A stretch of DNA of 64,000 nt, from the IMG/VR virus record IMGVR_UViG_3300020473_001965, positions 124,001-188,000 of that record, one strand, 5' to 3'. This document shows positions 21,623-43,655 of the stretch, piece by piece (the first letter of the stretch is position 1; each line of letters starts with the position of its first letter). The notes beneath the pieces were generated by a model, which did no database searches, was not told the DNA's origin, and was given only the letters and a program-made list of their open reading frames with translations. A program made the position numbers and the translations under genes.

Positions 21623-21655
21623 AAAAAAAAAGGGTGCCCTCTTGCGAGGGCACCC
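21623..21655 (-). terminator. Rho-independent terminator after the 1046-aa virion protein
   Basis: GGGTGCCCTC-GCAA-GAGGGCACCC followed by T9 on the minus strand (perfect 10-bp stem, GNRA loop). Confidence 0.92.
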
Positions 21656-21681: not shown

Positions 21682-24600
21682 TTAGGCCTTAATTACGATT
21701 ACCTGATCTTCGTTCTCAAGAGCGAAGAAGAACGCAACTCTATCAGCACCTACGCCGTGAAGCTTGTAGTCACCATTAGTAGCTGCAGTTCCTGAAAGCA
21801 TCAACTGGCCATTGACGTAAACGTCGGTAGCAGAAGGGTTCTGTCCACCGTCGTGATCAAGACTGTTGTTAACTGTCAGTGGAACACCAGCTGTGTGCGA
21901 TCCAGTGATTGCAACATTAAACTTGCCACGAGTACCACCGCCTGCGAGATCATTGAGAGCTCCGACGATTGACTTGTTGGCGGCAAAGTTTGAGATGTAA
22001 TCAGTGTACTCACCTACTGAAACAGCGAGTGAGAGAGCACCACCAGTAATGTTTGCTGCACCCGAGAATGCATCACCAAACTGAATTTCAGCGTTGGCGA
22101 CGGAGCCCGTAAGAAGCAGGTTACCACCCTTGCTGTCGATTGTCAAAACGCCTGTCTCGTTAGTAATCGATGAAGCTGAGCCGTTGTGTGACAGCTTAAG
22201 GTCTCTTCCTGTACCTGCACCCAAGAGTGTGTTATCAGGTACTCCAACGAAGTTGTTAGCAGAGTTGACAGTGAAGAGCAACGCATCAGAAGCATTCTTG
22301 ATTTCAAGAGCATCAGCATCAGAGTCTGAAACGATTATATCGCGGGATCCTTGCATATCAAGGTTGGCATCCAAGTCAAGAAGTTGACTTACTAGCACCT
22401 TCTCACTACCGTTTGATGTGATAGCAGCGATGTAGTTATTTGCACCCTCTTGGATAGCAAATGCCTGTGCGCTGTTATCAAGAATACCAATACGTGAAGT
22501 ACCTGAGAAGTGAGTATTGAGTCCACCTCCACCGTCCATCAAGAGTTGAGTATCTGCAACGAAGTGAAGAATACCATCAGCAACCTGCTGAATTCTAGTG
22601 TTGGCATCACCGAACTGAAGTTGCTTGTTACCGTTCAACAGAAGACCATTGTCAGGTACGTGAGTCAAACTTACATCTTGATCATCACCGAAGTTAAGAA
22701 CTGCAGAATCTGCAAGGAACAGATCTGACCAGTTGTTGTTAGCGCTACCAAGAGATGCACCATCATCATTCAGCGGGATAAGACCAGCTGTAGCGTTGAT
22801 AGTAACAGCACCGTTAGACTTGACTGCCAAGTTAACACCGGAAGATGCAATTCCCTTGTTGCTGCCATCGAACTGAAGTTCTCTGTTGTTGCCAAGGATT
22901 CGAATGTGAGCCGAACCTGAAAGTAGCGCTGCATCAGAATCTGATTCATCATACTCAATACCGAAGTTTAAGTCATTTCCGAACCAAACAACCTGGTTAT
23001 CAGCGAATCTCCAGTCTGCACCCGTCACGACAACTTTGTCTGCACTTGCTTCATCGTATGAGATAGTTCCGTCATTGTTACTACCAAATACAAGGCTCTT
23101 GTCGTCAGCCATCTGAAGACCGCTTCCGTTCATTGACATTACATCTGCGCCACCTGCTTCGAATGAGATTACGTCATCAGAAGGTGAGCGGATTGAAGTA
23201 TCGCCATCGAGGTCCAAGTCAATACGACCTTGGCCGTTTAGATCGATATCATCAACGAAGAGCTTACGCCAAGCAGTGCCATCAGCACCAAGGTCGTCAG
23301 CAGAGTCCCCACCAGGAAGAACGTTGTTACCAGCTGGATCGAGAACGATATCAGCAGCAGCAACAATTCTAACATTTGAAGAGTCAATGTCGATTTGGTT
23401 AGTTGCACCAGCAATCTGGAATGAGTCAGCGCGGAATGAGATATCAGATGTCATACTTGCAACAGATGTAATTGAGCCACTGTTCGGGTTAGCAATAGAA
23501 CCGATACCGAAAGCATTAGTATCGATACGGCCGAGTGCGACGTCAGGACGAGCAGCAGTAGCAGAGCCTGATGTGAAAAGGATACCGCTGTTAGAGTTAA
23601 GTGCTTGAGCACCTACACCCATAACGATAACTGGATCCTGAACAAGAAGGTTAGCTGTATCAAGCGTGGTTGTTGTTCCGTTAACTGTCAAATCACCTGG
23701 AACGGTGAGCGAACCAGCGATGGTAAACGCACCAGCAATTGTCATATCAGATAGAACGTGAACTGAATCAGCTCCCGATGAGCCACTTAACTCAATCTTT
23801 CCAGCAGAGGCTGAAAGGACGAGGTTTCCTGCATTAGCAACAAACTTTGAAGCAGCACCACCAGTTAGCTCAACAGCACCACCAGCATTGTGAGTAGAAG
23901 CGCCAGTTACATCAATATCAAGAATACCCGCGTCGACATCTACAATAGATCCGGCGTTAGCATCAGCGTCGATGTGAAGAGCAACTCCAGCAGTGTGAGC
24001 TGAGACTAGTGAAATGTGACCATCAGCAGAAGTCGTTGTTAAACTGATTTCGTCAGCGACATCGACGTCCATACCACCAGCTGAGGTTACTTTAAGTGCA
24101 TCTGCATCAGTTCCGTCAGCGTCTAGGATCAGAGAGTCATTACCTGCTTGAACAGTAACACCACCAGCAGTTGCGACAAGGCTGATAGCATCATCAGCTG
24201 TACCTGCTGTGTTTGTAAGTGAGACCTTCTCATTTGCAGGTGTACCGTGAGGGGTGAAGACCATCTCTACAGCACCGTTTTTACCGAGCTTGAGAGTCTG
24301 TCCGTCAGCAAGAATCGCACCCACTGTCATCGAGCCAGCTGAAGAGTCGATTGAAACCGCCCCTGAGCCGTCGATGTCAATAGCAGCAGCGTTAGCAACT
24401 GTTACGTTTCTATTGTCAGCAATGTTGAGGATTGAAACGCCACCTTCCTGAAGATCGACACCGGCTGCACCGTCAATTGTGAGAGCACCAGCAGCTGTAT
24501 CGATTTCCATGGCATCAGTAGCTTTAATATCACCTTCAAGGTGAAGATCTTGCCAAGCAGCAGATGCTGAACCTAAGTCGTAGGTGTCATCTGTTCCTGG

Positions 24601-24822
24601 AAGAAGGTTTTGATGAAATGTGCCTGCAGCTGATTCAGAGAATGACCCGGCGTGACCGTGAATTCTCTTAATAGATGAGGCTAAATGTGAGAGGACTACA
24701 TCAAGTGATCCAGCGCCAATAGATCCTGTTGCAAGTGCAGCTAACTGATCGTTAATCTGACCTGAACCATCACCGATTGATCCGGTTACTTGAGATAATC
24801 TCATTTGTGTTTTTGAAGCCAT
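21682..24822 (-). CDS. Large virion structural protein (tail fibre/whisker-like, 1046 aa)
   Basis: G/A/D/S-rich beta repeats; P..D...DLG....W..L motifs; GDLTVNGTTTT...L.V.DP.I fibre motif; strong terminator; C-terminal GSH..NGQL domain. Confidence 0.75.
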   Translation of the reverse strand: MASKTQMRLSQVTGSIGDGSGQINDQLAALATGSIGAGSLDVVLSHLASSIKRIHGHAGSFSESAAGTFHQNLLPGTDDTYDLGSASAAWQDLHLEGDIKATDAMEIDTAAGALTIDGAAGVDLQEGGVSILNIADNRNVTVANAAAIDIDGSGAVSIDSSAGSMTVGAILADGQTLKLGKNGAVEMVFTPHGTPANEKVSLTNTAGTADDAISLVATAGGVTVQAGNDSLILDADGTDADALKVTSAGGMDVDVADEISLTTTSADGHISLVSAHTAGVALHIDADANAGSIVDVDAGILDIDVTGASTHNAGGAVELTGGAASKFVANAGNLVLSASAGKIELSGSSGADSVHVLSDMTIAGAFTIAGSLTVPGDLTVNGTTTTLDTANLLVQDPVIVMGVGAQALNSNSGILFTSGSATAARPDVALGRIDTNAFGIGSIANPNSGSITSVASMTSDISFRADSFQIAGATNQIDIDSSNVRIVAAADIVLDPAGNNVLPGGDSADDLGADGTAWRKLFVDDIDLNGQGRIDLDLDGDTSIRSPSDDVISFEAGGADVMSMNGSGLQMADDKSLVFGSNNDGTISYDEASADKVVVTGADWRFADNQVVWFGNDLNFGIEYDESDSDAALLSGSAHIRILGNNRELQFDGSNKGIASSGVNLAVKSNGAVTINATAGLIPLNDDGASLGSANNNWSDLFLADSAVLNFGDDQDVSLTHVPDNGLLLNGNKQLQFGDANTRIQQVADGILHFVADTQLLMDGGGGLNTHFSGTSRIGILDNSAQAFAIQEGANNYIAAITSNGSEKVLVSQLLDLDANLDMQGSRDIIVSDSDADALEIKNASDALLFTVNSANNFVGVPDNTLLGAGTGRDLKLSHNGSASSITNETGVLTIDSKGGNLLLTGSVANAEIQFGDAFSGAANITGGALSLAVSVGEYTDYISNFAANKSIVGALNDLAGGGTRGKFNVAITGSHTAGVPLTVNNSLDHDGGQNPSATDVYVNGQLMLSGTAATNGDYKLHGVGADRVAFFFALENEDQVIVIKA

Positions 24823-24964
24823 TTGTTATTTTCCTTTTAGTTTATGTTTGTTTAGAATGATTTCTTACTAAACTACACGCTAACACTAACTGTCTTATTT
24901 AACCTAAACTAATAAACGAAATTAACTTAATTTTTAACTTAACGAAAACAAACGAAGCTGGGCT

Positions 24965-25192
24965 TCATTTCTTATATATCATCTTCTTTAGCAATCTTAT
25001 GTGATTGTCAAATTTTGAACACTCACTGTTAATAAAATCATACGCTAAAGAAATAGCCGATCCGTCTGAATCATCAAATTCAAACATGAATCTTCCATTG
25101 GCCGATGACTCTGCCTTTATTAACTTCAGGCCTTTCATGTGCAAGAAAGCAGCTGTGGCTAAGTCGGATGTTACAAAAGTTTTTTGAGCCAC
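24965..25192 (-). CDS. DUF5659-like small putative DNA-binding protein
   Basis: F.TSDLATAAFL...G.KL......F.FEF pattern; GAGGAG RBS before the GTG at 25192. Confidence 0.55.
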   Translation of the reverse strand: MAQKTFVTSDLATAAFLHMKGLKLIKAESSANGRFMFEFDDSDGSAISLAYDFINSECSKFDNHIRLLKKMIYKK

Positions 25193-25305
25193 TGGACCAG
25201 TCTCCTCGACTACAAAGTCATCAAAAATAAATATCAACTTAGTTCTAAATTTAACTTCTCAATACGACTGTCTTGATATCATATTGTCAATGAAAAGATG
25301 GACAC

Positions 25306-26583
25306 TTAACCAATCATCAAAGCTGTGACTACATCATCTTTTTCTAAATTAAATTTGAAAGTTATTCCTGACGTCGACGACCCTTCTAGTTCATAGTCGT
25401 AAGATGATCCCGAGGTCATTAGCTGGCCGTTTAAAAATATGTGTATTTTTGATGGCTTGTACTCTGCTTTTGAAAAATCTGCACTGCCCATCTTCAAAGC
25501 AATGTTTTGAGCATGAGAACCTGTAACGGCATAGACTACCTTGGATGGTAATCCAGAAGCAAATCCCGTCACAGAAGATGATGTCAGATAGGTTACGGCG
25601 TCTATTAAATCATCTTTCTCAAGCAGCGCATTTAATTTTATCTGGTTGTCTGATAGTATTGTGTAGTCAGCTTCATTGTCGTCTACTTGTGCACTTGTTC
25701 CAGAATGTAGAAGCTGCCCATTAAGGAAAACGTCTATCATGTTAGGTCTATTACCTGATTTTTCAAAACTAGTACTAGCAACCCTAAAGGCAGAACCAGC
25801 CGCATGTGACCCTGTTACAGTGTAGACCTTCTTCTCTCTAGTGTCATCAGATCCACTGCCGCCGCCGGAACCACTACCCCCGCCCCCGTTGCCAGAACCT
25901 GATGATCCTGACGCTACTACTTCGTCGAGCATCTTTCCTACATAAAGAAATGCCCTTGCTGTTGTTGGAATTTTAGCAGCATCATAATCTTGCAAGAACA
26001 CGATACCGTTATAATAATCAATACTCCAGTCTAGCTCGTCAAGAAGAGGAATCTCATTAGCCTCAGAAGGTTCGCCGGCGTAGATCTTCATGATGTAGGG
26101 GTTGGGTGCATCGTTAGAGAAGTTTGGTGGGACAATTTGAAGCCCACCTAGCGTCTCATAAAGCGTTTTACCATTATTAAATGTTCCGTTGCCCTTCTTG
26201 GCATTAGAAGAAACTGTTTGGTATGTTCCTGTCAAAGAAAGCTTATAAGCATGCGGACCGGAGCTTTGAGCTTCGTCTCCGCCACCAAAGCCTGTACTAC
26301 CAAATGAGCCTACGTTGGCGTCGTAAGTTGTTCCAGCTACTGCAGTTAAGTCAAACTGAACAAATTCAACTGTTGCATCTGAACCTGCCGAAGCACTCTG
26401 GAGTAAGTACAGTGTTTTTGCCGGGCTTGTGGGTATTGACTGTCCAAATATTGTCTGTGAAGCTACTTGAATATTTGAGCCGATCGTTTCTTGAGCATCA
26501 GACTTTAATGCAGACGTGTTTGCTTTGCCCAGAAGTTTTTTCTGAGCAAATAAAGTCGCTATCTGATTAGTTTTTCCTGCCAT
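25306..26583 (-). CDS. Virion structural protein (425 aa): shared N-terminal module, Gly/Ser linker and two GSH..NGQL domains
   Basis: The N-terminal ~220 aa are paralogous to the N-terminus of 26587..35313. The two C-terminal domains resemble the C-terminus of 21682..24822. Confidence 0.75.
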   Translation of the reverse strand: MAGKTNQIATLFAQKKLLGKANTSALKSDAQETIGSNIQVASQTIFGQSIPTSPAKTLYLLQSASAGSDATVEFVQFDLTAVAGTTYDANVGSFGSTGFGGGDEAQSSGPHAYKLSLTGTYQTVSSNAKKGNGTFNNGKTLYETLGGLQIVPPNFSNDAPNPYIMKIYAGEPSEANEIPLLDELDWSIDYYNGIVFLQDYDAAKIPTTARAFLYVGKMLDEVVASGSSGSGNGGGGSGSGGGSGSDDTREKKVYTVTGSHAAGSAFRVASTSFEKSGNRPNMIDVFLNGQLLHSGTSAQVDDNEADYTILSDNQIKLNALLEKDDLIDAVTYLTSSSVTGFASGLPSKVVYAVTGSHAQNIALKMGSADFSKAEYKPSKIHIFLNGQLMTSGSSYDYELEGSSTSGITFKFNLEKDDVVTALMIG

Positions 26584-26586
26584 GAT

Positions 26587-29500
26587 CTACTCGTATGCCA
26601 CCGTAATTCTATCTAAATAACCTGTCCAATTCTTGTGAGCCGTAATTCGAATTGCAACATACTCAGCTGAGGAAGCTGTTCCGTTACATGTCTCGCCATT
26701 GAGCGTGCAGATGTTTTCGGCACCGGACTTCACAACTGCGGCTGTCAAGTCACCGCTGAGACCTCCGTCTCCATCTGATGTGTTTCCGGCACCTGACGAA
26801 GCTCTGGCTGTGTCTAACCATCCCGTCTTTCCAGGCACCTTACATTCAACATGAATACTATCATTTGCTCCCAAGCTTCCTGAGTTGGGACCTGCTAGAG
26901 CTTTGATTGTAGCGTTTCCTCTTAATGTTATTGTGACTTGAGCCACATCGTTGGTGGTGTTGTTTTTGAACGCCCTAAAATATTCCCGGCGGCCGACAGA
27001 GGGTGAGCTATAGTTCATATTACCATCAGGTCCTTGCAAACTTCCTCCATCAGCAACGTTTCTATAGTCTCCTGAGTTTCCGCCTGTCAAGGGAGTTACT
27101 AGATGACCATCGTAAATTATTAATCCGCTATAGTAATTTGTATTACCACCGTCATTTACAGACTTTGTCGAATCCCAAGATCCTGTGGGTGCTCCGGCTT
27201 GACCCTGTGTTGTGTATGAACCTGAAATTAGCCTGTATTTTTCACCACTAAAGTATTCTTCAGTGTTTGCATTTGAATTATCGCTGGCACTAAACACCAT
27301 AAAGTTGGATTTAGTCTGGGTTGCAGTAGTTACATTACTCTTTAGCGGATGTTTTACCCTAAGCGCTGCGGCCGCAGAAGTTGCATTTTCTGGTAAAGAA
27401 TCAGCAGAAGCAAAAACCAGTGAAGCTGTCAAATTAAGGTTTGTCAGCTCAGACCCAGCTGTGGTCGATAATGACGGCATCGTTGTACTAGAGGCTGTCA
27501 CCTTTTTGTCTGTCAGCAAGGTTCCTGATGCTACTATATGCTGAACAGTCACATTTGATGTGTTTACGACTGAGATGGCTGAGCTGTCTGAAGAGTACAC
27601 ATCCCTGTACGAATTTACAAACCTTGCAAGAAGACTTGCTGTGCAGTGTGTGTAGTATTTTATTCCGCTCAAGTGGAAGAGGTTGTTTGATCCTGAGAAG
27701 TTTGTCATCGAAACATTGTCTGCAGACATTGTCGATGAATCATTGTCATTCACCCACTCGATATAGTTTGTATTTCTATCAGACCCAGCAACGGTGTGTA
27801 TAACCCTTGCATAATTCCAGCCGTTTCTCTGATCGGCAGTATGAATTTTGTACTTAGCTGTTCTATAGATCTCTGTATAGTCAGGCATACCGTTATTGTA
27901 TTCAGCATGGTCCCAAACACTAATGTTAGTAAAGCCTGAACCGTTACTATTCAAAGAAGATCCGGCACCGTCTCCTGGGTTTCCTGTGCCTATTAAGTTA
28001 TAAGACCCAGTAATCTCTACGGTGTGTATCACAGATCCATTTACTTCTAGTTTTAAAGATCCACTGTTTGCATCGGAGAAGGAATTGGCTACATGATTTT
28101 TGTGCGATCCGTTGTTGTCTCCTGTTACGTCTTCATTAAGATCACCTGTAATGTGTGTATCAAAAGCAAACACTGATCTTCGATGGTTGTTAGAAGACGC
28201 AGCAGTCTGATATGTTCCATTTATATCAACAGCAGAAAATCCGGCTGTTGTGCTTACATTTGTATAACCCGTTATTGACTTCGATGCGCCAAACGAAAGC
28301 TTGCAATCTGTACCATCTTCGTTACAATCGATATCATCCAGATCAGGTATCGCTGTAATTGTTCCAGTGCCTCCTCCAAATGATACTGTAATTTCACTAA
28401 TGTTTCCTGTCCAGGATGCGTCAGCTTCAATTCTTAAACCTATGTACTCATTATTGCCTATTCCTACTGTTCCTAGCGTTACATAGTTTGTGGCGCTTAA
28501 AGTATTGTCAAAGCTTAGTGAGCCATTTGCTGTGTGCGCTCCGTCGTTGTCGTCATATGAATCAAGAACAAACTCGGTCGCTAGATCTAACCAACCAGTA
28601 GATCTAGATCCATCTGACGGGAATTTTACAAAAGCACGGAGTCTGCTTGAATTTAGAGCAGTTGCTGCTGGGACGATTGTCCCGCCAGAGCCGTTAATTA
28701 CTATGGAGAGATCATATTTTGTAGAACCTGTTTCATTCTTGAACCATCTATAGAATGTTCTTTGACCAGACTCTCCTGAATAGTTGGGATTCTCTAGCGG
28801 CGAATTGTTTAAAGTCCCGCCCTCACTATCATCTCTAAAGTCACCTGAATTTAGTGCCTGAGTTGGTGAACAAAGTTTATCATCATAGAACTGAAGGCCG
28901 TTACTGTGCCCTCCATTTGACGATGTCATGTGTTTCTTAGAGTCCCATTTATTTGATGCATCATAGAGAGATGCTTGGGTATCATAAGATCCGCTAACAA
29001 TTCTATAATTTTCTCTTCTAAATGTCTCAGCAAGCGCTGTGGATGAATTAGAGAGGTCATACATCAATATCCCGGTAGTAGAAGATTGACCGCTATTAGA
29101 CAGGTTAGATTTTAGTGGGTGCGTAACTGAGACTCCTGCAGTTAGAGAACCACTGAGGAAATAGTTTGCTGATACAGTTGCTGATCCTGTTAGGTGGAGT
29201 GTTTTAGTGTGGTTTTCTCCTGCGCCCGTATTTATCGTTGGTTTTGCCTGTGCTGATATCGAATAAGTTACTCCAGATTTAGACGATGCTGAATTTGAAG
29301 TTGTAAAAGTTATATTGTTAGTATCGTAAACATTCCTATAGGCATTCTTAACTCTAGCCTTGTATGTTGCTGTTCCACTTCTAAAGTACTCGATACCGGA
29401 CAAGTGAATACTTCCCGAACCAACGAAGGCTAATGAATTACCCTCAGCAACAAGAGTGTTTGGATCATCATCATTCACCCATTCAATGTAATTGGTCGTC

Positions 29501-32500: not shown

Positions 32501-35313
32501 AATCGTGTTAATGACCCAGAAATCCCACTGGTGAAACTAGCAGAACCTGTAAAGAAGTGAGTGTCGTCTGAAGTGTCTCCAAACTTTGTCGAGCCGCTCC
32601 TATACATTATGCTAGAAGACACCACCATGGTGTGAAACTCATTAGCGACTATTGTACCAGAGACAATCAAGTCATCGTTGACAGTAACTTTGCCTTTAAA
32701 AGTACTCCCTGAGAGGGTTGCTACGAGAGAATCATCTAGTGCCAACTCAGTTGAATCTATCTTTAGACCTCCACCAGATTTAAGATCCAGAGAGAACGTG
32801 GTCGTTGAAAGGTCAAGCCCGTCGCCGGCAGTATACGTCGTGTTGGTATCTGTTGATGTAACTGTAACCTGACCATTAGAGGCTGAGGATATGGTTACGT
32901 TGTTTCCTGCAACTAGATATGATTTGCCATCGGTAAGCTGGGTTAGTGATCCAGAAAGACCTTTCGTTGCCTCTATAGAGCCTGTTGCACCAACATTTCC
33001 TCTAAATTGTGATCCACTGATAGTTGCTACAACTGAATCATTGATCGCGAGCTCTGTTGAATCTATTTTTAATCCGCCCCCAGACTTGAGATCGAGAGAA
33101 AACGTGGTTGTTGAAAGATCTAGTCCATCACCAGCTGTGTATGTTGTGTTGGTATCCGTCGACGTGACCGTAACTTGCCCATTAGACGAGGATGATATCG
33201 TAACATTATTACCGGCAACTAAATAAGATTTTCCATCTGTTAGGCGTGTTAATGAACCTGACATTCCAGTGGTAAAACTAGCTGATCCCGTAAAGAAGTG
33301 GGTGTCGTCTGAAGTGTCACCAAATTTAGTAGATCCAGATCTATACATAATGCTCGATGAGACCACCATGGTATGGAACTCATTGGCAACTATTGTACCA
33401 GAGACGATCAAATCATCGTTTACTGTGACCTTGCCCTTGAATGTACTACCTGAAAGTGTTGCTACAAGACTGTCATCGATTGTCAGTTCTGTTGAATCTA
33501 TCTTTAGACCACCGCCAGACTTAAGATCAAGAGCAAATTCTGTCCCACTAAGATCTAATCCATTACCAGCTGTGTATGTTGTGTTGGTATCAGTTCCGGT
33601 TATTGTAACCTGGCCGTTAGAAGCTGAAGTTATTGTTACATTCGATCCTGCAACTAGGTAGCTCTTTCCATCTGTTAGGCGTGTTAGAGAGCCAGAGAGA
33701 CCTGTTGTAGCGCCCAACGATCCTGTTACCCCGATATTTCCTCTAAACTGTGAACCAGTTAGAGTCGCGACGTATGAATCATCTATAGATAACTCTGTTG
33801 AGTCTATTTTTAATCCACCGGCAGATTTAAGATCTAGTGAAAATGTCGTAGTCGAAAGATCAAGACCATCGCCTGCTGTATAGGTTGTATTAGTATCAGT
33901 AGCAGCTATCGTAACAGATCCGTTAGAGGCTGAGGTAACTGATACGTTGTTTCCTGCAACTAGATATGAACGTCCATTGGTCAGTTTTGTAAGTGATCCT
34001 GAGAGACCGGCTGTGGCCTCTACAGATCCTGTCACTCCAACGTTTCCTCTGAACTGAGAACCGCTCGTAGTTGCAACAATTGAATCATCGATTGCCAGCT
34101 CAGTTGAATCTATCTTTAGGCCCCCAGATGACTTTAGATCAAGTGAGAATGTTGTGGTTGAAAGATCTAGTCCATCGCCGGCCGTGTACGTTGTGTTAGT
34201 ATCAGCTGAAGTTACTGTCACCTGTCCGTTTGATGAGCTAGTTATCGTTACATTACTTCCCGCTACTAAATAGCTCTTTCCATCCGTCAACCTCGTTAAA
34301 GATCCGGACATCCCCTGAGTAAAACTGGCAGATCCTGTAAAGAAGTGTGTGTCGTCTGAAGTGTCTCCAAACTTTGTCGACCCAGAACGATACATTATGC
34401 TGGAAGACACGACCATCGTATGGAATTCATTCGATATAATGGTTCCCGATACCACTAGATCATCTTTGACAGTCACTTGCCCTCGGAATGTACTTCCTGA
34501 CAGTGTTGCTACAAGGCTGTCATCAATTGCCAGCTCAGTTGAGTCTATCTTTAGACCACCACCAGATTTAAGATCAACACTAACTGTCGAGCTTGCTATA
34601 TCAATTCCATCTCCAGCTGTTAGAGAGCTTGAGCCGCTAGAAATGACCTCTTCGGCCATTTTTCCAACATAGACAAACGCTCGAGCATGTGCCGGAACTT
34701 TTGAAGCACTGTAATCTTGTAAAAAGAGTATCCCGTTATAGTAATCAACATTCCAGTCAATGTTGTCAAGCAGCGGGATTTCGTCCCCGACTCCGCCGGA
34801 TCCGTCATCTTTATATATCTTTACAATGTATGGGTTTGGTGCTGTCTGAGAAAAGAAGGGCGGGACGATTTGTATTTTACCCAATGTTTCATGAACGATC
34901 TTTCCGTTCTTGAATACAGTCCCACCTTTTGATGGGTTGCTAGAGCTTGCCTCATAATCAGACGTCAGTACAAACTTGTATGTATGAGGACCAGATGTTT
35001 GACTCGATTCTCCTGAATCAGATCCAGCGCCTCCACCAGTATCATTTGCATCGTATGTTGTACCTGTAAGGACGTTCAGAGAAAACTGAACATACTCTAC
35101 AGTATTAGCTGAGGATCCTGTCGCACTTTGTAGGACATAAAGCGTTCGGGTTGGCGACTCTGGAATTGATTCACCAAATATCAGCTCAGTGGATGTCTGG
35201 ATATTTGAACCAATCAGCTCTTCACCGTCTACTTTTAGATTCGACGTGTGCGCCTTACCTAGAAGCTTCTTCTGGGCAAAATAAGTTGCTGATATGTTAC
35301 TCTTTTTTGCCAT
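26587..35313 (-). CDS. Giant repetitive virion fibre/adhesin-like protein (2908 aa)
   Basis: S/T/G-rich; seven DLKS.GGLKIDSTEL repeat units; GKVGIGT..P...LDV.G fibre motifs; the C-terminal ~1200 aa are paralogous to 35314..39243. Confidence 0.8.
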   Translation of the reverse strand: MAKKSNISATYFAQKKLLGKAHTSNLKVDGEELIGSNIQTSTELIFGESIPESPTRTLYVLQSATGSSANTVEYVQFSLNVLTGTTYDANDTGGGAGSDSGESSQTSGPHTYKFVLTSDYEASSSNPSKGGTVFKNGKIVHETLGKIQIVPPFFSQTAPNPYIVKIYKDDGSGGVGDEIPLLDNIDWNVDYYNGILFLQDYSASKVPAHARAFVYVGKMAEEVISSGSSSLTAGDGIDIASSTVSVDLKSGGGLKIDSTELAIDDSLVATLSGSTFRGQVTVKDDLVVSGTIISNEFHTMVVSSSIMYRSGSTKFGDTSDDTHFFTGSASFTQGMSGSLTRLTDGKSYLVAGSNVTITSSSNGQVTVTSADTNTTYTAGDGLDLSTTTFSLDLKSSGGLKIDSTELAIDDSIVATTSGSQFRGNVGVTGSVEATAGLSGSLTKLTNGRSYLVAGNNVSVTSASNGSVTIAATDTNTTYTAGDGLDLSTTTFSLDLKSAGGLKIDSTELSIDDSYVATLTGSQFRGNIGVTGSLGATTGLSGSLTRLTDGKSYLVAGSNVTITSASNGQVTITGTDTNTTYTAGNGLDLSGTEFALDLKSGGGLKIDSTELTIDDSLVATLSGSTFKGKVTVNDDLIVSGTIVANEFHTMVVSSSIMYRSGSTKFGDTSDDTHFFTGSASFTTGMSGSLTRLTDGKSYLVAGNNVTISSSSNGQVTVTSTDTNTTYTAGDGLDLSTTTFSLDLKSGGGLKIDSTELAINDSVVATISGSQFRGNVGATGSIEATKGLSGSLTQLTDGKSYLVAGNNVTISSASNGQVTVTSTDTNTTYTAGDGLDLSTTTFSLDLKSGGGLKIDSTELALDDSLVATLSGSTFKGKVTVNDDLIVSGTIVANEFHTMVVSSSIMYRSGSTKFGDTSDDTHFFTGSASFTSGISGSLTRLVDGKSYLVAGNNVTITSASNGQVTVAAAASSPAGANTQIQYNNGGSFGASSAFTFTGTEVELNAASPKITLRRSNNSQNSNLSFEGAAGAVGASLMLSGATTNDLVLSTHDGTSLVERVRIGSNLPNIAVDLTGTLRSTLGLSGSLTRLIDGKSYLVAGNNVTITSASNGQVTVAATNTNTTYTAGNGLDLGGTEFALDLKSGGGLKIDSTELAIDDSLVATLSGSTFRGQVTINDDLVVSGSIIANEFHTMVVSSSIMYRSGSTKFGDTSDDTHHFTGSVDIAGTLKVDGNVTFNESGADKDFRVESSGKTGMLFVDGGNDSVGIGTTTPGAQPDEKDDLVIGDHTGNRGMTIASANTGIGTIRFARTTNANDGEGWIDYSGNTNKMRFGTNGLNTRMTIDSAGKVGIGTGSPSTELDVDGTIKGSALSGSLTRLSDGSSYLIAGSGVAITSASNGQVTVAMNPFDSDLGNTLDQAYDEGATGAGAIITVDNQPVQIKVAGGSSVALAITGTTIFGSSSVATSNHLPPLPGTNVTFFVSGAQGGGVTPATSGVAVFSGDVVLSGTLFGGSPLKVGNDFEFNTTDGTTPTVKNPSGSIKLFARDEVKLGSDAGTIRLIDLGSSAAGNIYLTGSATGTQRKVRIHTKGELHLTGGVSLRVKSNESIFSGDLVTSGVLAAKGPFGGVISGSINNTKEGVSYLVAGNNVTIASASNGQVTISASASGGSINVSSGSTSISSISRVDFTDGFVVNDSQGGIASVTSSIGKPEDGSYTDGLFTDFLSTTPIGTAIDRFNEVLKALAPEPAPALDNINALHSGSGVYLSFGSSNNLASSNPAYTSVAASAGVGSAADVNALYTVVTASNNIRMGVFDGDTHITGILNSDVAYNSQGNSIQNYPKYSFGEGDSGVVRLTVNGTTIKTVDLTQDPIGSGSSGLGSGSHVDANGSGFKFFSSPSTGTLSNGNAFTSFKHRTGKFFIASGTQRRGWNYARVQHIRTGSTQTTNYIEWVNDDDPNTLVAEGNSLAFVGSGSIHLSGIEYFRSGTATYKARVKNAYRNVYDTNNITFTTSNSASSKSGVTYSISAQAKPTINTGAGENHTKTLHLTGSATVSANYFLSGSLTAGVSVTHPLKSNLSNSGQSSTTGILMYDLSNSSTALAETFRRENYRIVSGSYDTQASLYDASNKWDSKKHMTSSNGGHSNGLQFYDDKLCSPTQALNSGDFRDDSEGGTLNNSPLENPNYSGESGQRTFYRWFKNETGSTKYDLSIVINGSGGTIVPAATALNSSRLRAFVKFPSDGSRSTGWLDLATEFVLDSYDDNDGAHTANGSLSFDNTLSATNYVTLGTVGIGNNEYIGLRIEADASWTGNISEITVSFGGGTGTITAIPDLDDIDCNEDGTDCKLSFGASKSITGYTNVSTTAGFSAVDINGTYQTAASSNNHRRSVFAFDTHITGDLNEDVTGDNNGSHKNHVANSFSDANSGSLKLEVNGSVIHTVEITGSYNLIGTGNPGDGAGSSLNSNGSGFTNISVWDHAEYNNGMPDYTEIYRTAKYKIHTADQRNGWNYARVIHTVAGSDRNTNYIEWVNDNDSSTMSADNVSMTNFSGSNNLFHLSGIKYYTHCTASLLARFVNSYRDVYSSDSSAISVVNTSNVTVQHIVASGTLLTDKKVTASSTTMPSLSTTAGSELTNLNLTASLVFASADSLPENATSAAAALRVKHPLKSNVTTATQTKSNFMVFSASDNSNANTEEYFSGEKYRLISGSYTTQGQAGAPTGSWDSTKSVNDGGNTNYYSGLIIYDGHLVTPLTGGNSGDYRNVADGGSLQGPDGNMNYSSPSVGRREYFRAFKNNTTNDVAQVTITLRGNATIKALAGPNSGSLGANDSIHVECKVPGKTGWLDTARASSGAGNTSDGDGGLSGDLTAAVVKSGAENICTLNGETCNGTASSAEYVAIRITAHKNWTGYLDRITVAYE
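31680..34630 (-). repeat. Intragenic tandem repeats (long ~148-aa and short ~102-aa units, order L-S-S-L-S-L-[unique]-L)
   Basis: Recurrent TYTAG[DN]GLDL..., KIDSTEL, EFHTMVVSSSIMYRSGSTKFGDTSDDTH (4x), QFRGN (3x), SGSLT.L.DG.SYLVAG.NVTI; copies diverge at synonymous sites. Confidence 0.9.
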
Positions 35314-38300
35314 TTATCCGCTCCAACTCACATCTACCCTGCTTATGTAGCCTGACCAATTTTTATGGGCAGTTATTTTTAAAACAAAATATTCTTGTCC
35401 TGAAACTGTACCGTCTACAGTTAACCCATTAAAGGTGCACGTGTTTACTGCACCTGAACCATCTGCAGTTGCGTCTAGATCTCCGCTCAAACAGCCGTCG
35501 CCATCAGATGTATTGCCCGAACCGGGTGATGGACGACCCAAGTCTAGGAACCCTGACTTCTCTGGTATTTTTGCCTCTACATATATGTTTTTATTTGTTC
35601 CCAGAGATCCTGAATTTGCGCCGGCTTTTCCAACAATTATTGCATCACCGTAGATTGTAATAGAAACACTCGGTCGATCGTTAGCTGTGTTATTTAAAAA
35701 CCCACGATAGTATTCTCTGGCGCCGATAGCTAAACTGCTATAATTAACATTTCCAGCAGGGCCCTCTATTGTTCCGCCCTCTGAATGATTTCTAAAGTCT
35801 CCTGAATTTCCTCCATCGAGTGGGCTAATTAGATAACCGTCATAAAGCATTAAACCATTATAATAAGTTGAAGCGCTTGCGTTATTAATCGAAGATGTAG
35901 AAGACCATTTATTTCCAGACGAGGTCACAGAAGACTGAGTTCCGTAGCTTCCGCTTTGCAGTCTATACTTTTCTCCATCAAAATATTCGTTCGTATTTGC
36001 ATTTGATCCATCACTAGCCGAATACACGTGAAGATTTGTTGTTGTCAAAGTTGACATCGTCAAATTCGTCTTCAACGGATGATCAAAAACCATTGCACCG
36101 GCACAACTATAAGCCGTCGTATAAGTTCCCAATAAAGACTTCGATCGAGAAAATCTAATTGTTCCTGTGGCGTGAAGGCTTTCATTTTGAGAATCAGTTG
36201 CAGAGCTCAAAGTTTGTAATGAATCAGTTGACGAAGATGTCGACTTTGTAGAAGACAATCCCGAACCTGACTGAATAATTTTTATTGCTGAAGCGTTTGA
36301 TAAAGCTGTAAATGATATCGCAGAATTGCTATCTGAATATACGTTCTTATACAGATTTGAGACTCTTGTTTGTATGGTTCCGCTTGGCTGAACAAAATAC
36401 TTCACACCGCTTAAATGGAACGTATTATCATCTTGAAATGCAGCAAGCGAAGAGCCCGCTTCAGCCAAAGCATTAGAGTCGTTATCATTTACCCACTCAA
36501 CGTAGTTGGTAGCTCTATCAGATCCTGCTACAGAGTGAATTACCCTCGCATAGTTCCATCCGTTTCTTTGATCAGCAACTACGACTCTATACTTTCCTGT
36601 CCTAAAAACCTCTGTATAGTCTGGAACGTTATTGGCATACGTTTCTGGCTCCCATGTGCTCAAACTCACAAAGCCTGAGCCATTACTGTTAACTGACGTG
36701 CCTCCCCCAGATCCTGGCGCGCCGGACCCTACTAGATTATAAGACCCGGTCAATTCAACTGTATGGATAACTGAGCCATTCACTTCTAATTTTAATGATC
36801 CGCTATTTGCGTCAGAAAATGAATCAGCGACGTACTTCCCTGAAACAGCTGATACATCGTCGTTTAATTTGCCTTCCACAACCGTATCTAGCGCAAACAC
36901 AGAACGCCTCAGGTTGTTTGAAGATGCAGCAGTCTGATACAGACCATTGATATCGACAGCAGTTCCCAGACCTGCTGAAGCTGCAACGTTTGCATACCCA
37001 GTGACCGACTTTGAAGATCCGAACGATAAATTGCAATCCGTTCCGTCATCGTCACAACCAATATCATCTAGATCTGGAATTGCTGTGATCGTTCCTGAGC
37101 CTGCGCCAAACGATACAGTTACATTATCCAGATATCCTGTCCAAGAAGCATCAGCCTCGATTCTCAAGACAATATATTCATTATTTCCAACGCCTACTGT
37201 GCCTAAAGTCACCTCGTTGGTTGCGTCTACACTTGAATCAAAGGTGTTACCACTTGACCACGATGCATTAGCTCCATCATTATCATCATAAGAATCCAAG
37301 ACAAAATCTGTTGCTATGTCAAGCCAACCAGTCGACCTTGATCCGTCTGATGGGAACTTGACAAACACTCTTATTCTTCCGCTATTTAAAGCGGTGGCAG
37401 CTGAGACTATTGTCGTGCCACTTCCTTCTATCACCAGGGAAAGATCATACTTTGTAGAACCTGTTTCATTCTTGAACCATCTATAAAATGTTCTCTGGCC
37501 AGACTCGGAAGAGTAGTTAGGATTTTTTGAAGGTGCATTATTTAATGTCCCTCCATCAGCGTTATCCCTAAAGTCACCTGAATTGAGAGTTTTTGTGGGA
37601 GAATATAATCTATCTCTATAAAATTGCAGGCCATTTGAATGACCACCATTAGAGGACGTCATATGTTTGTTAGAATTCCACGAATTCGCGCCGGCGACGA
37701 TAGATGCCTGGGTGTCGTATGCGCCGCTTACTATTCGATAATTTTCTCTTCTGAACGTTTCAACAAGCGCTGTAGAAGAGTTCGACAGGTCGTACATCAG
37801 GATGCCTGTTGTTGATGCTTGACCTGAATTTGATAGATTGCTTTTAAACGGATGTGTTACACTGACCCCTGCAGTCAAAGATCCGCTAAGAAAGTAGTTG
37901 GCAGATACAGTTGCAGAACCTGTCAAGTGAAGTGTTTTGGTATTGTCTTCTCCTGCGCCTGTATTTATTGTTGGTTTTGACTGGGCAGAAATTGAATATG
38001 AGGCTCCGCTTGAAGCGGCTGCACTATTGGATGTGGTAAAAGTTATATTATTAGTATCGTATACGTTTTTGTATGCATTTGCAACACGAACAACGTAGCT
38101 AGCTGTTCCGCTTCGGAAATATTCTATACCTGAAAGGTGTATGCTTCCTGATCCTACAAAAGATAGTTCGTTTCCTGCAGCAGTTAAAGCATTTGCATTA
38201 TCATCATTTACCCATTCGATATAATTGGTTGTAGTTGTTGTACCTGTTCTTACGTGTTGGACCCTAGCATAGTTCCAGCCGCGGCGTTGGGTGCCGGATG

Positions 38301-39243
38301 CTATAAAGAACTTGCCTGTCCTGTGTCTGAAAGAATCGAAAGAATTTCCATTGGAAAGCGTTCCTGTAGTAGACACGGAAAAGAATTTAAACCCAGAGCC
38401 ATTTGCATCTACGTGGGATCCCGTTCCCAACCCAGAAGTTCCGCTTCCAATTGGATCTTGAGATAAATCAACTGTCTTAATTGTTGAACCATTAACAGTT
38501 AGTCGAACAACTCCTGAGTTCCCTTCTCCAAAAGAATACTTTGGATAATTCTGAATACTGCTACCCTGACTGTTATAAGCTACATCACTATTTAGAATTC
38601 CCGTAATATGAGTGTCGCCGTCGAAAACGCCTAGACGAAGATTGTTGCTCGATGTGACAACTGTATATAGACCGTTTACATCAACGGCGGACGCAACGCC
38701 TGCTGACGCTGCTACACTTACGTATGCGGGCGTAGCTGATGCTAGATTGTTTGAAGACCCGAATGAAAGATAGACTCCCGAACCAGAGTGAAGAGCATTA
38801 ATATTATCTAAAGCAGGGGCGGGTTCAGGTGCTAAAGCTTTGAGCACTTCGTTAAACCTGTCGATTGCAGTCCCAATTTCTGTGTTGGTTGTGAAATCTG
38901 TAAAAAGACCGTCTGTATATGACCCATCTTCTGCCGAACCTATGGTACTAGACCCAGATGTTGCCGCTGTAATTGTTATTTGACCATCAGATGAACTTGC
39001 CACAGTCACGTTGTTTCCTGCAACAATATATGATCGACCATCTTTTATCTTTGTAATTGATCCAGTTATGGCCCCGCCACTGGGTCCCAGTGAACTAACT
39101 GTCCCACTTAAAAAAGATGACCCTGTCAAAAACAGTTGTTGATCTTTGAAAGTTAGTTTTGCATCCCCGGTAAACTCACTACCGCTGGCGAACTGTATCG
39201 ATCCATCAGAACCAGATGGGCTTACTACACGAATAGCTGTCAT
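35314..39243 (-). CDS. Large virion structural protein (1309 aa), paralogue of the C-terminal part of the 2908-aa protein
   Basis: Shares EDGSYTDGLFTDF..IGTAIDRFNEVLKALAPEPAPALDNI, GWNYARV.H, NY.EWVND and QRTFYRWFKNETGSTKYDL with it. Confidence 0.8.
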   Translation of the reverse strand: MTAIRVVSPSGSDGSIQFASGSEFTGDAKLTFKDQQLFLTGSSFLSGTVSSLGPSGGAITGSITKIKDGRSYIVAGNNVTVASSSDGQITITAATSGSSTIGSAEDGSYTDGLFTDFTTNTEIGTAIDRFNEVLKALAPEPAPALDNINALHSGSGVYLSFGSSNNLASATPAYVSVAASAGVASAVDVNGLYTVVTSSNNLRLGVFDGDTHITGILNSDVAYNSQGSSIQNYPKYSFGEGNSGVVRLTVNGSTIKTVDLSQDPIGSGTSGLGTGSHVDANGSGFKFFSVSTTGTLSNGNSFDSFRHRTGKFFIASGTQRRGWNYARVQHVRTGTTTTTNYIEWVNDDNANALTAAGNELSFVGSGSIHLSGIEYFRSGTASYVVRVANAYKNVYDTNNITFTTSNSAAASSGASYSISAQSKPTINTGAGEDNTKTLHLTGSATVSANYFLSGSLTAGVSVTHPFKSNLSNSGQASTTGILMYDLSNSSTALVETFRRENYRIVSGAYDTQASIVAGANSWNSNKHMTSSNGGHSNGLQFYRDRLYSPTKTLNSGDFRDNADGGTLNNAPSKNPNYSSESGQRTFYRWFKNETGSTKYDLSLVIEGSGTTIVSAATALNSGRIRVFVKFPSDGSRSTGWLDIATDFVLDSYDDNDGANASWSSGNTFDSSVDATNEVTLGTVGVGNNEYIVLRIEADASWTGYLDNVTVSFGAGSGTITAIPDLDDIGCDDDGTDCNLSFGSSKSVTGYANVAASAGLGTAVDINGLYQTAASSNNLRRSVFALDTVVEGKLNDDVSAVSGKYVADSFSDANSGSLKLEVNGSVIHTVELTGSYNLVGSGAPGSGGGTSVNSNGSGFVSLSTWEPETYANNVPDYTEVFRTGKYRVVVADQRNGWNYARVIHSVAGSDRATNYVEWVNDNDSNALAEAGSSLAAFQDDNTFHLSGVKYFVQPSGTIQTRVSNLYKNVYSDSNSAISFTALSNASAIKIIQSGSGLSSTKSTSSSTDSLQTLSSATDSQNESLHATGTIRFSRSKSLLGTYTTAYSCAGAMVFDHPLKTNLTMSTLTTTNLHVYSASDGSNANTNEYFDGEKYRLQSGSYGTQSSVTSSGNKWSSTSSINNASASTYYNGLMLYDGYLISPLDGGNSGDFRNHSEGGTIEGPAGNVNYSSLAIGAREYYRGFLNNTANDRPSVSITIYGDAIIVGKAGANSGSLGTNKNIYVEAKIPEKSGFLDLGRPSPGSGNTSDGDGCLSGDLDATADGSGAVNTCTFNGLTVDGTVSGQEYFVLKITAHKNWSGYISRVDVSWSG

Positions 39244-43647: not shown

Positions 43648-43655
43648 ATCTACCC

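What the first reader, a model, noticed from the sequence alone, without database searches (positions are those of the whole stretch)
21682..39243. Four giant virion proteins assembled combinatorially from shared modules
Module A (FAQKKLLGKA.TS...DYYNGI.FLQDY, ~220 aa) starts both the 425-aa and 2908-aa proteins. Module C (TGSH..G...[DH][VI][FY][LV]NGQL..SG...DY, ~85 aa) occurs twice in the 425-aa protein and once at the end of the 1046-aa protein. Module D (~1200 aa) ends the 2908-aa protein (26587-30215) and forms nearly all of the 1309-aa protein (35314-38950). D is itself a tandem of two ~600-aa units (P.LD.I...GWNYARV.H...NY.EWVND), giving four copies. The SYLVAG.NVT linker is shared as well. 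Inference: a branched or hetero-oligomeric appendage system with common anchor, shaft and tip parts, unlike standard T4 fibres.
Basis: seen in the sequence. Interest (0 to 1): 0.62.

Follow-up and report, generated by a model that had tools for sequence, protein, structure and literature searches.

The report
Modular tail-fibre gene array, jumbo phage
Four large neighbouring genes of an uncultured marine jumbo phage really are built from shared modules, because a two-gene fibre cassette was doubled and two of its genes fused at a repeated shaft element; the parts look like a multi-part host-recognition fibre related in principle to known branched phage tailspike systems.

Summary
Four minus-strand ORFs (1309, 2908, 425 and 1046 aa) share modules:
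- A: 60% identity.
- D: 66% over about 1,330 aa. D is an internal duplication, 37% identity, E 3e-83.
- C: three copies.
- The SYLVAG shaft element: ten copies.

The window lies in a 235.7-kb IMG/VR marine jumbo-phage contig. In 89 related loci the usual arrangement is [N-(S)n-D1-D2] → [A-(S)n-C] → DUF5659 → [E-C].

Trees of D and A, and the mapped junction, show two diverged cassettes in tandem here. The A-shaft gene of cassette 1 is fused in frame to the D gene of cassette 2, exactly at an S element.

AlphaFold models give:
- D unit: helix, two Ig-like sandwiches, and a CBM-like jelly-roll.
- C: a gp10-like XD2/XD3 (DUF4183-type) docking module, as in CBA120 TSP4, K1E adaptors and T7 gp17 N-termini.

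P0002 therefore looks like an adaptor: anchor, Gly/Ser linker, two sockets. The fusion deleted exactly the two parts expected to touch, which is a Rosetta-stone hint.

The branched-fibre reading is partly supported. No proteomic or binding evidence exists. I rate it a new variant of a known kind, of moderate interest.

The parts
39112..39243 (-). P0004 N-peptide (aa 1-44, MTAIRVV...), the conserved N-terminus of stand-alone D proteins; candidate docking peptide
   Evidence: Conserved across most short D genes of related loci. Near-identical in L080/L081. Absent from the fusion protein P0003.
38965..39069 (-). P0004 S element (aa about 59-93, SYIVAG motif)
   Evidence: Motif at residue 71. Member of DNA repeat family D4, 67% identical to the reference copy.
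37099..38958 (-). P0004 D1 unit (aa 96-715): helix, two Ig-like sandwiches, CBM-like jelly-roll
35317..37098 (-). P0004 D2 unit (aa 716-1309)
   Evidence: 37% identical to D1, E 3e-83.
34630..35313 (-). P0003 module A (aa 1-228), cassette-1 type anchor domain
   Evidence: 59-60% identical to P0002 1-228. Groups with the A of the L079 fusion gene (99*), apart from the clade holding P0002's A.
31243..34629 (-). P0003 shaft (aa 229-1357): short and long S units plus unique inserts U1 (IQYNNGG motif) and U2 (GIGT motifs)
   Evidence: Motif map. Unit alignment A3. DNA repeats 62-79% identical. Marginal PDB profile hits to the Afp13 tailocin fibre and an adenovirus-type fibre, E 0.02-0.03.
31144..31242 (-). 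Fusion junction: the S element (aa about 1358-1390) where cassette-1 A-shaft joins cassette-2 D gene
   Evidence: L080 D protein aa 45-420 aligns to P0003 1358-1728 at 86%; its first 44 aa have no counterpart. An X1 contig spans 30855-32590 with 0 differences; variant contigs in X1 and X4 diverge at 31159.
30334..31143 (-). P0003 U3 segment plus last S element (aa 1391-1660), the N-terminal part of the cassette-2 D gene
   Evidence: Same U3-S-D1-D2 order in the stand-alone 1600-aa D genes of L008/L009 = L080/L081.
26590..30333 (-). P0003 D1+D2 units (aa 1661-2908), cassette-2 type
   Evidence: 66% identical to P0004 D. 84% identical to the D of L080/L081. Placed in a 100*-supported clade.
25900..26583 (-). 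P0002 module A (aa 1-228), cassette-2 type anchor domain
25846..25899 (-). P0002 Gly/Ser-rich flexible linker (aa 229-246)
   Evidence: Seen in the sequence. pLDDT below 50 for residues 225-247. Comparable to the Gly-rich inter-domain linkers of CBA120 TSP4 (PMC8825819).
25309..25845 (-). P0002 modules C1 (aa 247-335) and C2 (aa 341-425): gp10-like XD2/XD3 / DUF4183-type beta-jellyrolls
24965..25237 (-). Small conserved ORF (90 aa, DUF5659) between the A gene and the E gene
   Evidence: Pfam DUF5659, E 9.5e-8, above the cut-off. tblastn hits in 59 related loci at the same position.
21943..24822 (-). P0001 E body (aa 1-960), with conserved N-peptide (MA.KTQ.RL.Q.TGS ... IKRIHG) and a repetitive Ala/Gly/Asp-rich fibre-like body
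   Evidence: N-terminal conservation over more than 40 loci. No Pfam or PDB match.
21685..21942 (-). P0001 module C3 (aa 961-1046)
   Evidence: 33-43% identical to the C modules of P0002. Aligned in A6.
21632..21655 (-). Strong intrinsic-terminator-like hairpin closing the array
   Evidence: 10-bp stem with 8 G-C pairs, followed by a run of nine T, 27 nt after the P0001 stop codon. No comparable site lies between P0004, P0003 and P0002.

Best explanation
The region is the late-operon fibre (host-adhesion) gene array of an uncultured marine jumbo phage, probably contractile-tailed.

The lineage's basic cassette encodes three large proteins:
1. A distal D protein: a short conserved N-peptide, an optional shaft, and two D units. 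Each D unit is a helix, two Ig-like domains and a CBM-like jelly-roll.
2. An adaptor-type A protein: an N-terminal anchor A, an optional shaft of S units, and C-terminal gp10-like C modules.
3. An E fibre that also ends in a C module.

In this phage two diverged copies of the D+A gene pair lie in tandem. The A-shaft gene of the first pair has been fused in frame to the D gene of the second pair, by recombination within the shared S (SYLVAG) element. This created the 2908-aa protein.

Proposed mechanism (inferred):
- A anchors trimers to the virion.
- S units form an extensible shaft whose unit number changes by recombination.
- C modules act as sockets or joints between trimeric components, as XD2/XD3 do in T4 gp10 and CBA120 TSP4.
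- D units bind host surface glycans.
- The fusion turns a non-covalent A-to-D joint into a covalent one, so the particle would display two D specificities (66% identical).

Shown: the modules, the cassette history, the junction, the folds.
Inferred: virion location, trimer state, who docks on whom, glycan binding.
For: - Phage context and late-operon setting: prohead protease and an Amidase_2 endolysin lie directly upstream, genes are tightly packed, and a strong terminator follows P0001.
- A tape-measure-like gene lies in the window and a sheath-like hit lies 5 kb beyond it.
- Cassette order is conserved in about 50-80 loci.
- D tree: P0004 pairs with L001's D (100*). P0003's D sits with L079's fusion gene and the stand-alone D genes of L080/L081 (84% identity).
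- A tree: P0002's A groups with L079/L080/L081, while P0003's A groups elsewhere.
- Junction: L080 aa 45-420 equals P0003 1358-1728 at 86%, and the N-peptide is lost.
- Analogous fusion genes, in the same gene position, occur in L052 and L061 in another clade.
- The fusion is not an artefact. The same architecture is present in an independent sample (L001/L079). The longest exact repeat is 35 nt. An X1 contig spans the junction with no differences.
- Folds: D1 pLDDT 91.7 with a CBM-like C-terminal jelly-roll. C matches TSP4 XD2/XD3, podophage fibre anchors, the K1E adaptor and gp10.
- The function of XD2/XD3 as trimer docking sites is experimentally established in CBA120 and T4 (PMC8825819).
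Against: - There is no direct evidence that any of the four proteins is in the virion. All relatives are unnamed metagenomic proteins.
- Here the C modules are C-terminal, whereas in known adaptors and tailspikes XD modules follow the N-terminal anchor and precede a body. The socket role is therefore an analogy.
- Pfam DUF4183 hits are below the cut-off.
- The array is separated from the tail-gene cluster by replication genes.
- Module A has no recognised fold match, so 'anchor' rests only on its invariant N-terminal position.
Confidence: 0.6

Rival explanations
1. The proteins are four independent fibres. Each attaches to the virion on its own: A-type proteins through A, and D and E through their own N-peptides. 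The C modules are distal tip or knob domains, or inter-fibre contacts, rather than sockets. There is no branched complex.
For: - The C modules are at the extreme C-terminus of P0002 and P0001, the usual place of receptor-binding tips.
- The fold is a generic small beta-jellyroll that also forms spore appendages such as F-ENA.
- The complex prediction gave no support, though this is not evidence against binding.
Against: - The best structural and profile matches of C are specifically docking or anchor modules: TSP4 XD2/XD3, K64-1 N-terminal tandem domains, gp10, the K1E adaptor.
- P0002 would then be a 425-aa fibre with no shaft.
- The recurrent A-shaft~D fusions suggest that A and D proteins are neighbours in one structure.
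Confidence: 0.22
2. The proteins are capsid, neck or whisker fibres (head decoration with Ig-like and lectin-like domains) rather than tail receptor-binding proteins.
For: - The array lies next to the prohead protease, not in the tape-measure and sheath cluster.
- Ig-like domains are common in capsid decoration proteins (general knowledge).
Against: - The top matches are tail-fibre anchors and tailspike or baseplate modules.
- Sizes of 1,000-2,900 aa with long repetitive shafts are more typical of tail fibres.
Confidence: 0.1
3. The 2908-aa gene is a metagenome misassembly that joins two co-occurring strains at a shared shaft repeat.
For: - The junction lies in a repeated element.
- Variant contigs in X1 and X4 diverge at 31159, and odd joints occur in the shaft region.
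Against: - No exact repeat is longer than 35 nt, and only 26 nt is shared at the junction element.
- A Logan contig of 1,736 nt spans the junction with 0 differences.
- A contig from another sample (L001/L079) has the same A-shaft-U2-S-D fusion at 74-93% protein identity.
- Analogous fusions occur in L052 and L061.
Confidence: 0.03
4. The proteins are non-virion proteins, for example secreted or host-surface adhesins made during infection.
For: There is no proteomic evidence of virion incorporation, and Ig-like and CBM-like domains occur in many secreted bacterial proteins.
Against: - No signal-peptide-like N-termini are evident in the sequences.
- N-termini are conserved in the way fibre attachment peptides are.
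- The fold matches are dominated by phage tail components.
- The genes sit in a late operon with an endolysin and a prohead protease.
Confidence: 0.05

Closest known systems
Branched receptor-binding complex of Ackermannviridae (CBA120 TSP1-4) and the T4 gp10 XD2/XD3 docking modules
   Same: - Several large adhesin genes lie side by side.
- In CBA120 and T4 these modules bind other trimers (PMC8825819).
   Different: - Here the C modules are C-terminal, and in P0002 no enzymatic or binding body follows them.
- There is no sequence-level family membership: Pfam is silent or sub-threshold.
- The distal parts are Ig plus CBM-like D units, not beta-helix depolymerases.
- The anchor A is unrelated to the TSP4 AD domain.
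Adaptor proteins of SP6/K1-5/K1E-like and G7C-like podophages (T7 gp17 N-terminal anchor plus gp10-like/DUF4183 domains)
   Same: - P0002 has adaptor size (425 aa) and logic: an anchor plus two docking-type modules.
- BFVD hit to a 'K1E endosialidase adaptor protein'.
- Atlas hit to clusters with Phage_T7_tail + DUF4183.
   Different: - The phage is a jumbo phage with a sheath-like gene, not a podophage.
Alcyoneusvirus (RaK2 / K64-1) multi-branched adsorption complex
   Same: - A jumbo phage with many fibre or spike genes whose N-terminal tandem gp10-like domains build a branched structure.
- The K64-1 depolymerase N-terminal tandem domains are the best PDB profile hit of module C.
- RaK2 and K64-1 proteins appear among the BFVD hits. 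PMC10253068 describes that complex (seen by abstract only).
   Different: - The hits are sub-threshold at sequence level (E 0.14).
- There are no depolymerase domains here, and the module order differs.
T4 long tail fibre (gp34-gp37), a serially joined multi-protein fibre
   Same: The concept is the same: a long fibre built of several different trimeric proteins encoded by adjacent genes. The proposed A-protein to D-protein joint would be analogous.
   Different: There is no sequence or profile similarity to T4 fibre families, and the modules A, S, D and E are different.
Adenovirus / Afp13 (tailocin) type fibre shaft repeats
   Same: The S unit motif (GDGL...GGGLxIDS...) aligns to the Afp13 fibre and to an adenovirus-type fibre shaft.
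   Different: The E-values are only marginal (0.02-0.03), and the unit length (102 or 145 aa) is far longer than the 15-aa triple beta-spiral repeat.

Membership tests
gp10-like XD2/XD3 (DUF4183-type) docking module | Small (about 60-85 aa) beta-jellyroll fold superposable on TSP4 or gp10 XD2/XD3 | tested here: met
   [not shown]
gp10-like XD2/XD3 (DUF4183-type) docking module | Sequence-profile membership (Pfam DUF4183 PF13799 or related) above the curated cut-off | tested here: not met
   P0002 and P0001 have no Pfam hit. None of the 37 C modules hits DUF4183. The C' variants of relatives reach 13-16 bits against a cut-off of 25.1. The PDB profile finds K64-1 and gp10 only at E 0.14 and 0.4.
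gp10-like XD2/XD3 (DUF4183-type) docking module | Tandem modules joined by flexible Gly-rich linkers after an N-terminal anchor | tested here: met
   P0002 is A (1-228), a Gly/Ser linker (229-246, pLDDT below 50), C1, a short linker (336-343, pLDDT below 50), then C2.
gp10-like XD2/XD3 (DUF4183-type) docking module | Trimeric module that binds another trimeric fibre or spike | tested here: inconclusive
   Complex prediction of the C-C trimer with the D N-peptide trimer gave 'no answer', score 0.01. This is not evidence either way.
Branched multi-RBP complex (Ackermannviridae / Alcyoneusvirus type) | Several adjacent RBP genes, one carrying anchor plus docking modules, the others carrying conserved N-terminal attachment parts | tested here: met
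   Gene order and N-peptide conservation.
Branched multi-RBP complex (Ackermannviridae / Alcyoneusvirus type) | Physical hetero-oligomeric complex on the baseplate | not testable with these tools
   Needs proteomics, cryo-EM or biochemistry. No cultured relative was found.
T4-type long or short tail fibres (gp34-37, gp12) | Profile similarity to T4 fibre families | tested here: not met
   No Pfam, PHROG or PDB sequence hits to T4 fibre proteins.
Carbohydrate-binding module / galactose-binding-like jelly-roll (C-terminal domain of each D unit) | Beta-jelly-roll fold like CBM4/16/22/29/35/61 | tested here: inconclusive
   [not shown]
Carbohydrate-binding module / galactose-binding-like jelly-roll (C-terminal domain of each D unit) | Binds a glycan ligand | not testable with these tools
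   Needs glycan arrays or host binding assays.
Triple beta-spiral fibre shaft (adenovirus / Afp13 type) | Profile similarity of the shaft repeat | tested here: inconclusive
   A3 profile: 8uus_A E 0.023, 8qjx_C E 0.026.

The most novel reading that the evidence does not exclude
This marine jumbo-phage lineage uses a previously undescribed plug-and-socket fibre system.
- C-terminal gp10-like modules on an adaptor (A-C-C) and on a second fibre (E-C) serve as sockets for the conserved N-peptides of other fibres.
- The conserved S shaft element doubles as a recombination joint. It lets whole cassettes be duplicated, deleted, lengthened, or converted from non-covalent joints into single giant covalent fibres, with fusions recurring in separate clades.

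If true, the array would be a natural Rosetta-stone map of fibre assembly order in phages that cannot yet be cultured.
Probability: 0.3. Interest if true: 0.7.

Novelty: new variant of a known kind. Interest (0 to 1): 0.55.

Why it matters
Host recognition is the least understood part of uncultured marine jumbo phages.

- **Scale.** This array defines a widespread fibre cassette with no Pfam or PHROG family for modules A, S, D and E: more than 130 IMG/VR hits, 314 protein relatives, and marine metagenomes from at least 7 studies.
- **Link to known mechanism.** Its C module ties the cassette to the well-studied gp10-like docking principle.
- **Evolutionary record.** The array shows how giant fibre genes arise. 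A cassette was duplicated in tandem and two genes fused at a conserved shaft element.
- **Testable consequence.** The fusions give hypotheses about which proteins contact each other, without needing a cultured host. The D units (two Ig-like domains plus a CBM-like jelly-roll) are candidates for glycan-binding host-range determinants.

Tried and rejected
- Pfam and PHROG scans of the four proteins gave only spurious low-complexity-type hits (AsqO_C, CBM_X2, DCX, with 0 passing stretches) and unknown-function PHROGs.
- phmmer of all four proteins against the PDB gave nothing meaningful. The P0002 hits are Gly/Ser-linker matches to scFv linkers.
- Megablast of the region against the phage collection found no match. 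tblastn of P0004 found only three unannotated huge-phage metagenome records at 27-32% identity.
- Foldseek of the D1 model against the PDB gave only global multi-domain beta-sandwich matches with TM 0.1-0.17, which is uninformative.
- The E-family profile against the PDB gave nothing.
- ESM Atlas feature searches gave no usable hit for D1. Module A gave a score of 0.88 to an unnamed viral cluster and 0.83 to YomF_N, both below the level the tool treats as more than a lead.
- Complex prediction (P0002 244-425 x3 with P0004 1-100 x3) returned 'no answer', score 0.01. It is not evidence for or against docking.
- I looked for co-variation between the N-peptide type of the D gene and the C versus C' type of the A protein across loci. 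There was no clean pattern.
- PF26696, listed for some relatives, was not reproduced by my Pfam scan of P0091.
- I did not use the large representative-protein search, because no claim here rests on the absence of relatives.
- No other genetic code was needed.


Full report
**1. Observation**

The window (G000:C1:124001-188000) lies in a single 235,672-bp IMG/VR virus record. It is classed as linear, CheckV completeness 87%, GC 42.6%.

Four minus-strand ORFs occupy 21682-39243 (translations):
- P0004: 1309 aa, 35314-39243.
- P0003: 2908 aa, 26587-35313.
- P0002: 425 aa, 25306-26583.
- P0001: 1046 aa, 21682-24822.

- Module A: P0002 1-228 vs P0003 1-225, 59-60% identity.
- Module D: P0003 1588-2907 vs P0004 23-1307, 66% identity.
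- D is an internal duplication: the two halves of P0004 are 37% identical, E 3e-83.
- Module C occurs at P0002 247-335 and 341-425 and at P0001 961-1046, 33-43% identity.
- The SYLVAG element occurs nine times in P0003 and once in P0004.

The shaft of P0003 consists of short 102-aa units and long 145-aa units. A long unit is a short unit plus a 43-aa insert. Mean column identity is 74%. Unique inserts that I call U1, U2 and U3 lie between them.

At DNA level the repeats are only 62-79% identical, and the longest exact repeat in the whole array is 35 nt. The repeats are therefore old and are conserved at protein level. They are not recent copies.

**2. Context**

The window is clearly phage. 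It encodes a DnaE-type polymerase, RNR, DnaB, an exonuclease, UvsX, SSB, a prohead protease, an Amidase_2 + PG_binding_1 endolysin and a tape-measure-like protein. A sheath-like hit, below the Pfam cut-off, lies 5 kb beyond the window.

The four genes are tightly packed. P0004 and P0003 abut, and 3 nt separate P0003 from P0002. No terminator-like site lies between them. A strong hairpin with a run of T at 21632-21655 follows P0001.

A conserved 90-aa DUF5659 ORF (24965-25237) sits between P0002 and P0001.

**3. Relatives and the origin of the architecture**

No cultured or annotated relative exists.
- Megablast against phage genomes is empty.
- P0004 hits only three unannotated huge-phage metagenome records.
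- 314 protein relatives of P0002 are all unnamed metagenomic proteins.

IMG/VR, however, holds more than 130 loci with a D homologue, on contigs of up to 293 kb. The flanking order is conserved in about 50 of them: SSB, UvsX, exonuclease, DnaB, RNR, protease, amidase, D, A, DUF5659, E.

Mapping modules onto ORFs of 89 loci shows the normal state is three large genes:
- [N-peptide-(S)n-D1-D2]
- [A-(S)n-C or C']
- [E-C]

S-unit numbers range from 0 to 9.

An extra A-S...-D1-D2 gene occurs only in the window phage, in its 83%-identical relative L001/L079, and in L052 and L061 of another clade. It always lies between the D gene and the A-C gene.

The trees explain this.
- D tree: P0004 pairs with L001's D (100*). 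The D part of P0003 groups with the L079 fusion and with the stand-alone 1,600-aa D genes of L080/L081, at 84% identity.
- A tree: P0002's A groups with L079/L080/L081 (98*). P0003's A groups with the L079 fusion (99*), among A proteins of a different cassette type.

So the array is two diverged D+A cassettes in tandem: [D1st][A1st-shaft ~ U3-S-D2nd][A2nd-C-C].

The junction can be located. L080's D protein aa 45-420 aligns to P0003 1358-1728 at 86%. Its first 44 aa, the conserved MTAIRVV... N-peptide that P0004 also has, have no counterpart. The break falls in an S element, window about 31144-31242.

Unequal recombination between S elements gives exactly this gene order. The reverse event would regenerate the single-cassette state of L080/L081. 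The direction of the event cannot be settled, because the relevant fork has only 93% support.

Shaft length also differs between P0003 (2908 aa) and the L079 fusion (2490 aa). P0003 715-1071 has no counterpart.

**4. Is the fusion real?**

- The same architecture is present in a contig from another sample (L001/L079).
- Analogous fusions exist in L052 and L061.
- Only 26 nt of exact identity links the junction element to another S element.
- The stretch is held by marine metagenome runs from seven studies.
- In run X1, which may be the source sample but was assembled by a different assembler, a 1,736-nt contig spans 30855-32590 with no differences.
- Lower-depth variant contigs in X1 and X4 follow the window from about 31429 or 31279 down to 31159 and then diverge. 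That position is the edge of the junction S element. This would fit strain-level recombination at the same joint, but it is thin evidence.

**5. Folds**

*D1 unit* (P0004 96-715, with a 48-sequence alignment). The model has pLDDT 91.7. It shows a helix at residues 28-42, two Ig-like sandwiches at about 45-385, and a jelly-roll at 396-620.

*P0002.* The model has pLDDT 74.7, with A (45-225) and both C modules well modelled and the linkers disordered.

Module C matches:

Other lines agree.
- BFVD hits are a K1E endosialidase adaptor protein, RaK2 and K64-1 proteins, ViI and Det7 tailspikes, and T4-type gp10.
- The ESM Atlas search finds clusters with DUF4183 and Phage_T7_tail.
- A profile of 37 C modules finds, in the entire PDB, only the tandem N-terminal domains of the K64-1 depolymerase (E 0.14) and a gp10 chain (E 0.4).
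- The C' variant that ends many A proteins in relatives touches Pfam DUF4183 in 6 of 10 sequences, at 13-16 bits against a cut-off of 25.1.

**6. Mechanism proposed**

P0002 has the logic of an adaptor: anchor A, a flexible Gly/Ser linker, and two docking-type modules. Its most conserved feature is an N-terminal ..KKLLGKA.TS.. motif.

The D and E proteins carry strongly conserved N-peptides, as client fibres do.

The fusion removed the 44-aa N-peptide of the second D gene. By comparison with the nearest A proteins, which end in C or C', it also removed the C-terminal module of the first A gene. These are exactly the two elements that would meet if D docks on the A protein. Recurrent fusion in the order A-shaft-D, in separate clades, is a Rosetta-stone type indication that A is proximal and D distal in one structure.

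The particle would then display two D paralogues that are 66% identical. One is joined covalently to its own anchor (P0003). The other (P0004) is joined non-covalently. There is also the E fibre.

All of this section is inference. The only direct test available, complex prediction, returned no answer.

**7. Comparison and novelty**

The principle of branched or serial multi-protein receptor-binding assemblies built with gp10-like modules is known from Ackermannviridae, from G7C and from SP6/K1-5-like phages (PMC8825819). PMC11414711 and, for Alcyoneusvirus, PMC10253068 were seen only as abstracts in the listing.

What is new here:
- The lineage: uncultured marine jumbo phages.
- Modules A, S, D and E, which have no family.
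- The C-terminal position of the docking-type modules.
- The double [two Ig-like + CBM-like] D units.
- The documented route by which a 2908-aa fibre gene arose.

I rate it a new variant of a known kind, interest about 0.55.

**8. Limits**

- There is no evidence of virion incorporation or of oligomeric state.
- The tree forks that would decide the direction and number of fusion events were not tested with AU tests.

Noticed in passing
window 24965-25237 (-): A 90-aa ORF with a Pfam DUF5659 hit (E 9.5e-8, above the cut-off) lies between the A-C-C gene and the E gene. tblastn finds it at the same position in 59 related loci. It could be a fibre assembly factor or a small structural joint, but its function is unknown.
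   Followed up: partly
window 32534-34000 (shaft region of P0003): Contigs of about 1.8 kb in runs X1 and X4 lay on the shaft with joints: one skips 756 nt between 32871 and 33628, and others go back 1139 and 1272 nt. This suggests either a population variant with a different number or order of shaft units, or assembler confusion in the repeats.
   Followed up: no
window 31159: Lower-depth variant contigs in X1 (196 nt) and X4 (501 nt) match the window on the high-coordinate side and diverge exactly at 31159, the edge of the S element that forms the fusion junction. They may be co-occurring strains with a different module after this joint.
   Followed up: partly
G000:C1:15844-17511 (+), outside the window: A 556-aa open frame elsewhere in the genome holds a stretch similar to the long-unit insert of the shaft (P0003 1187-1269, 37% identity, E 8e-7). 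It is possibly another fibre-like protein sharing this element.
   Followed up: no
G000:C1:193151-193486 (-), locus L090: A sub-threshold Phage_sheath_1 hit (27 bits, cut-off 31.4) in a roughly 700-aa ORF lies 5 kb beyond the window. This suggests a contractile tail. Tail genes (tape-measure-like 58099-62730, unknown 1049-aa and 1150-aa ORFs) are separated from the fibre array by replication genes.
   Followed up: partly
L036, L044, L045, L062, L077 (D genes of 1,900-2,480 aa): In one clade the D gene carries a long, different N-terminal extension starting MSDNDNVW..P.APPPPLFTG.KEKDL, instead of the MTAIRV-type peptide. Other long D genes start with a third type, M..K..L.K.D.LV.... So there are several alternative attachment ends for the same D body.
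   Followed up: no
L052 4774-8922 and L061 1-3861: In the two other genomes with a fusion gene, the upstream stand-alone D gene has only one D unit (S...-D1) instead of two. So the D-unit number itself varies.
   Followed up: partly
window 49687-50895 (-) and 6235-9765 (-): Besides the full DnaE-type polymerase (1176 aa), a 402-aa ORF hits a DNA-polymerase PHROG over only part of the profile (phrog_17, positions 944-1198 of 1445). It may be a polymerase fragment or an accessory domain.
   Followed up: no
window 41146-43683 / 43656-45059 (-): As called from the first start codon, the ribonucleotide reductase ORF overlaps the end of the DnaB-like helicase ORF by 28 nt. The true RNR start is probably further downstream.
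   Followed up: no
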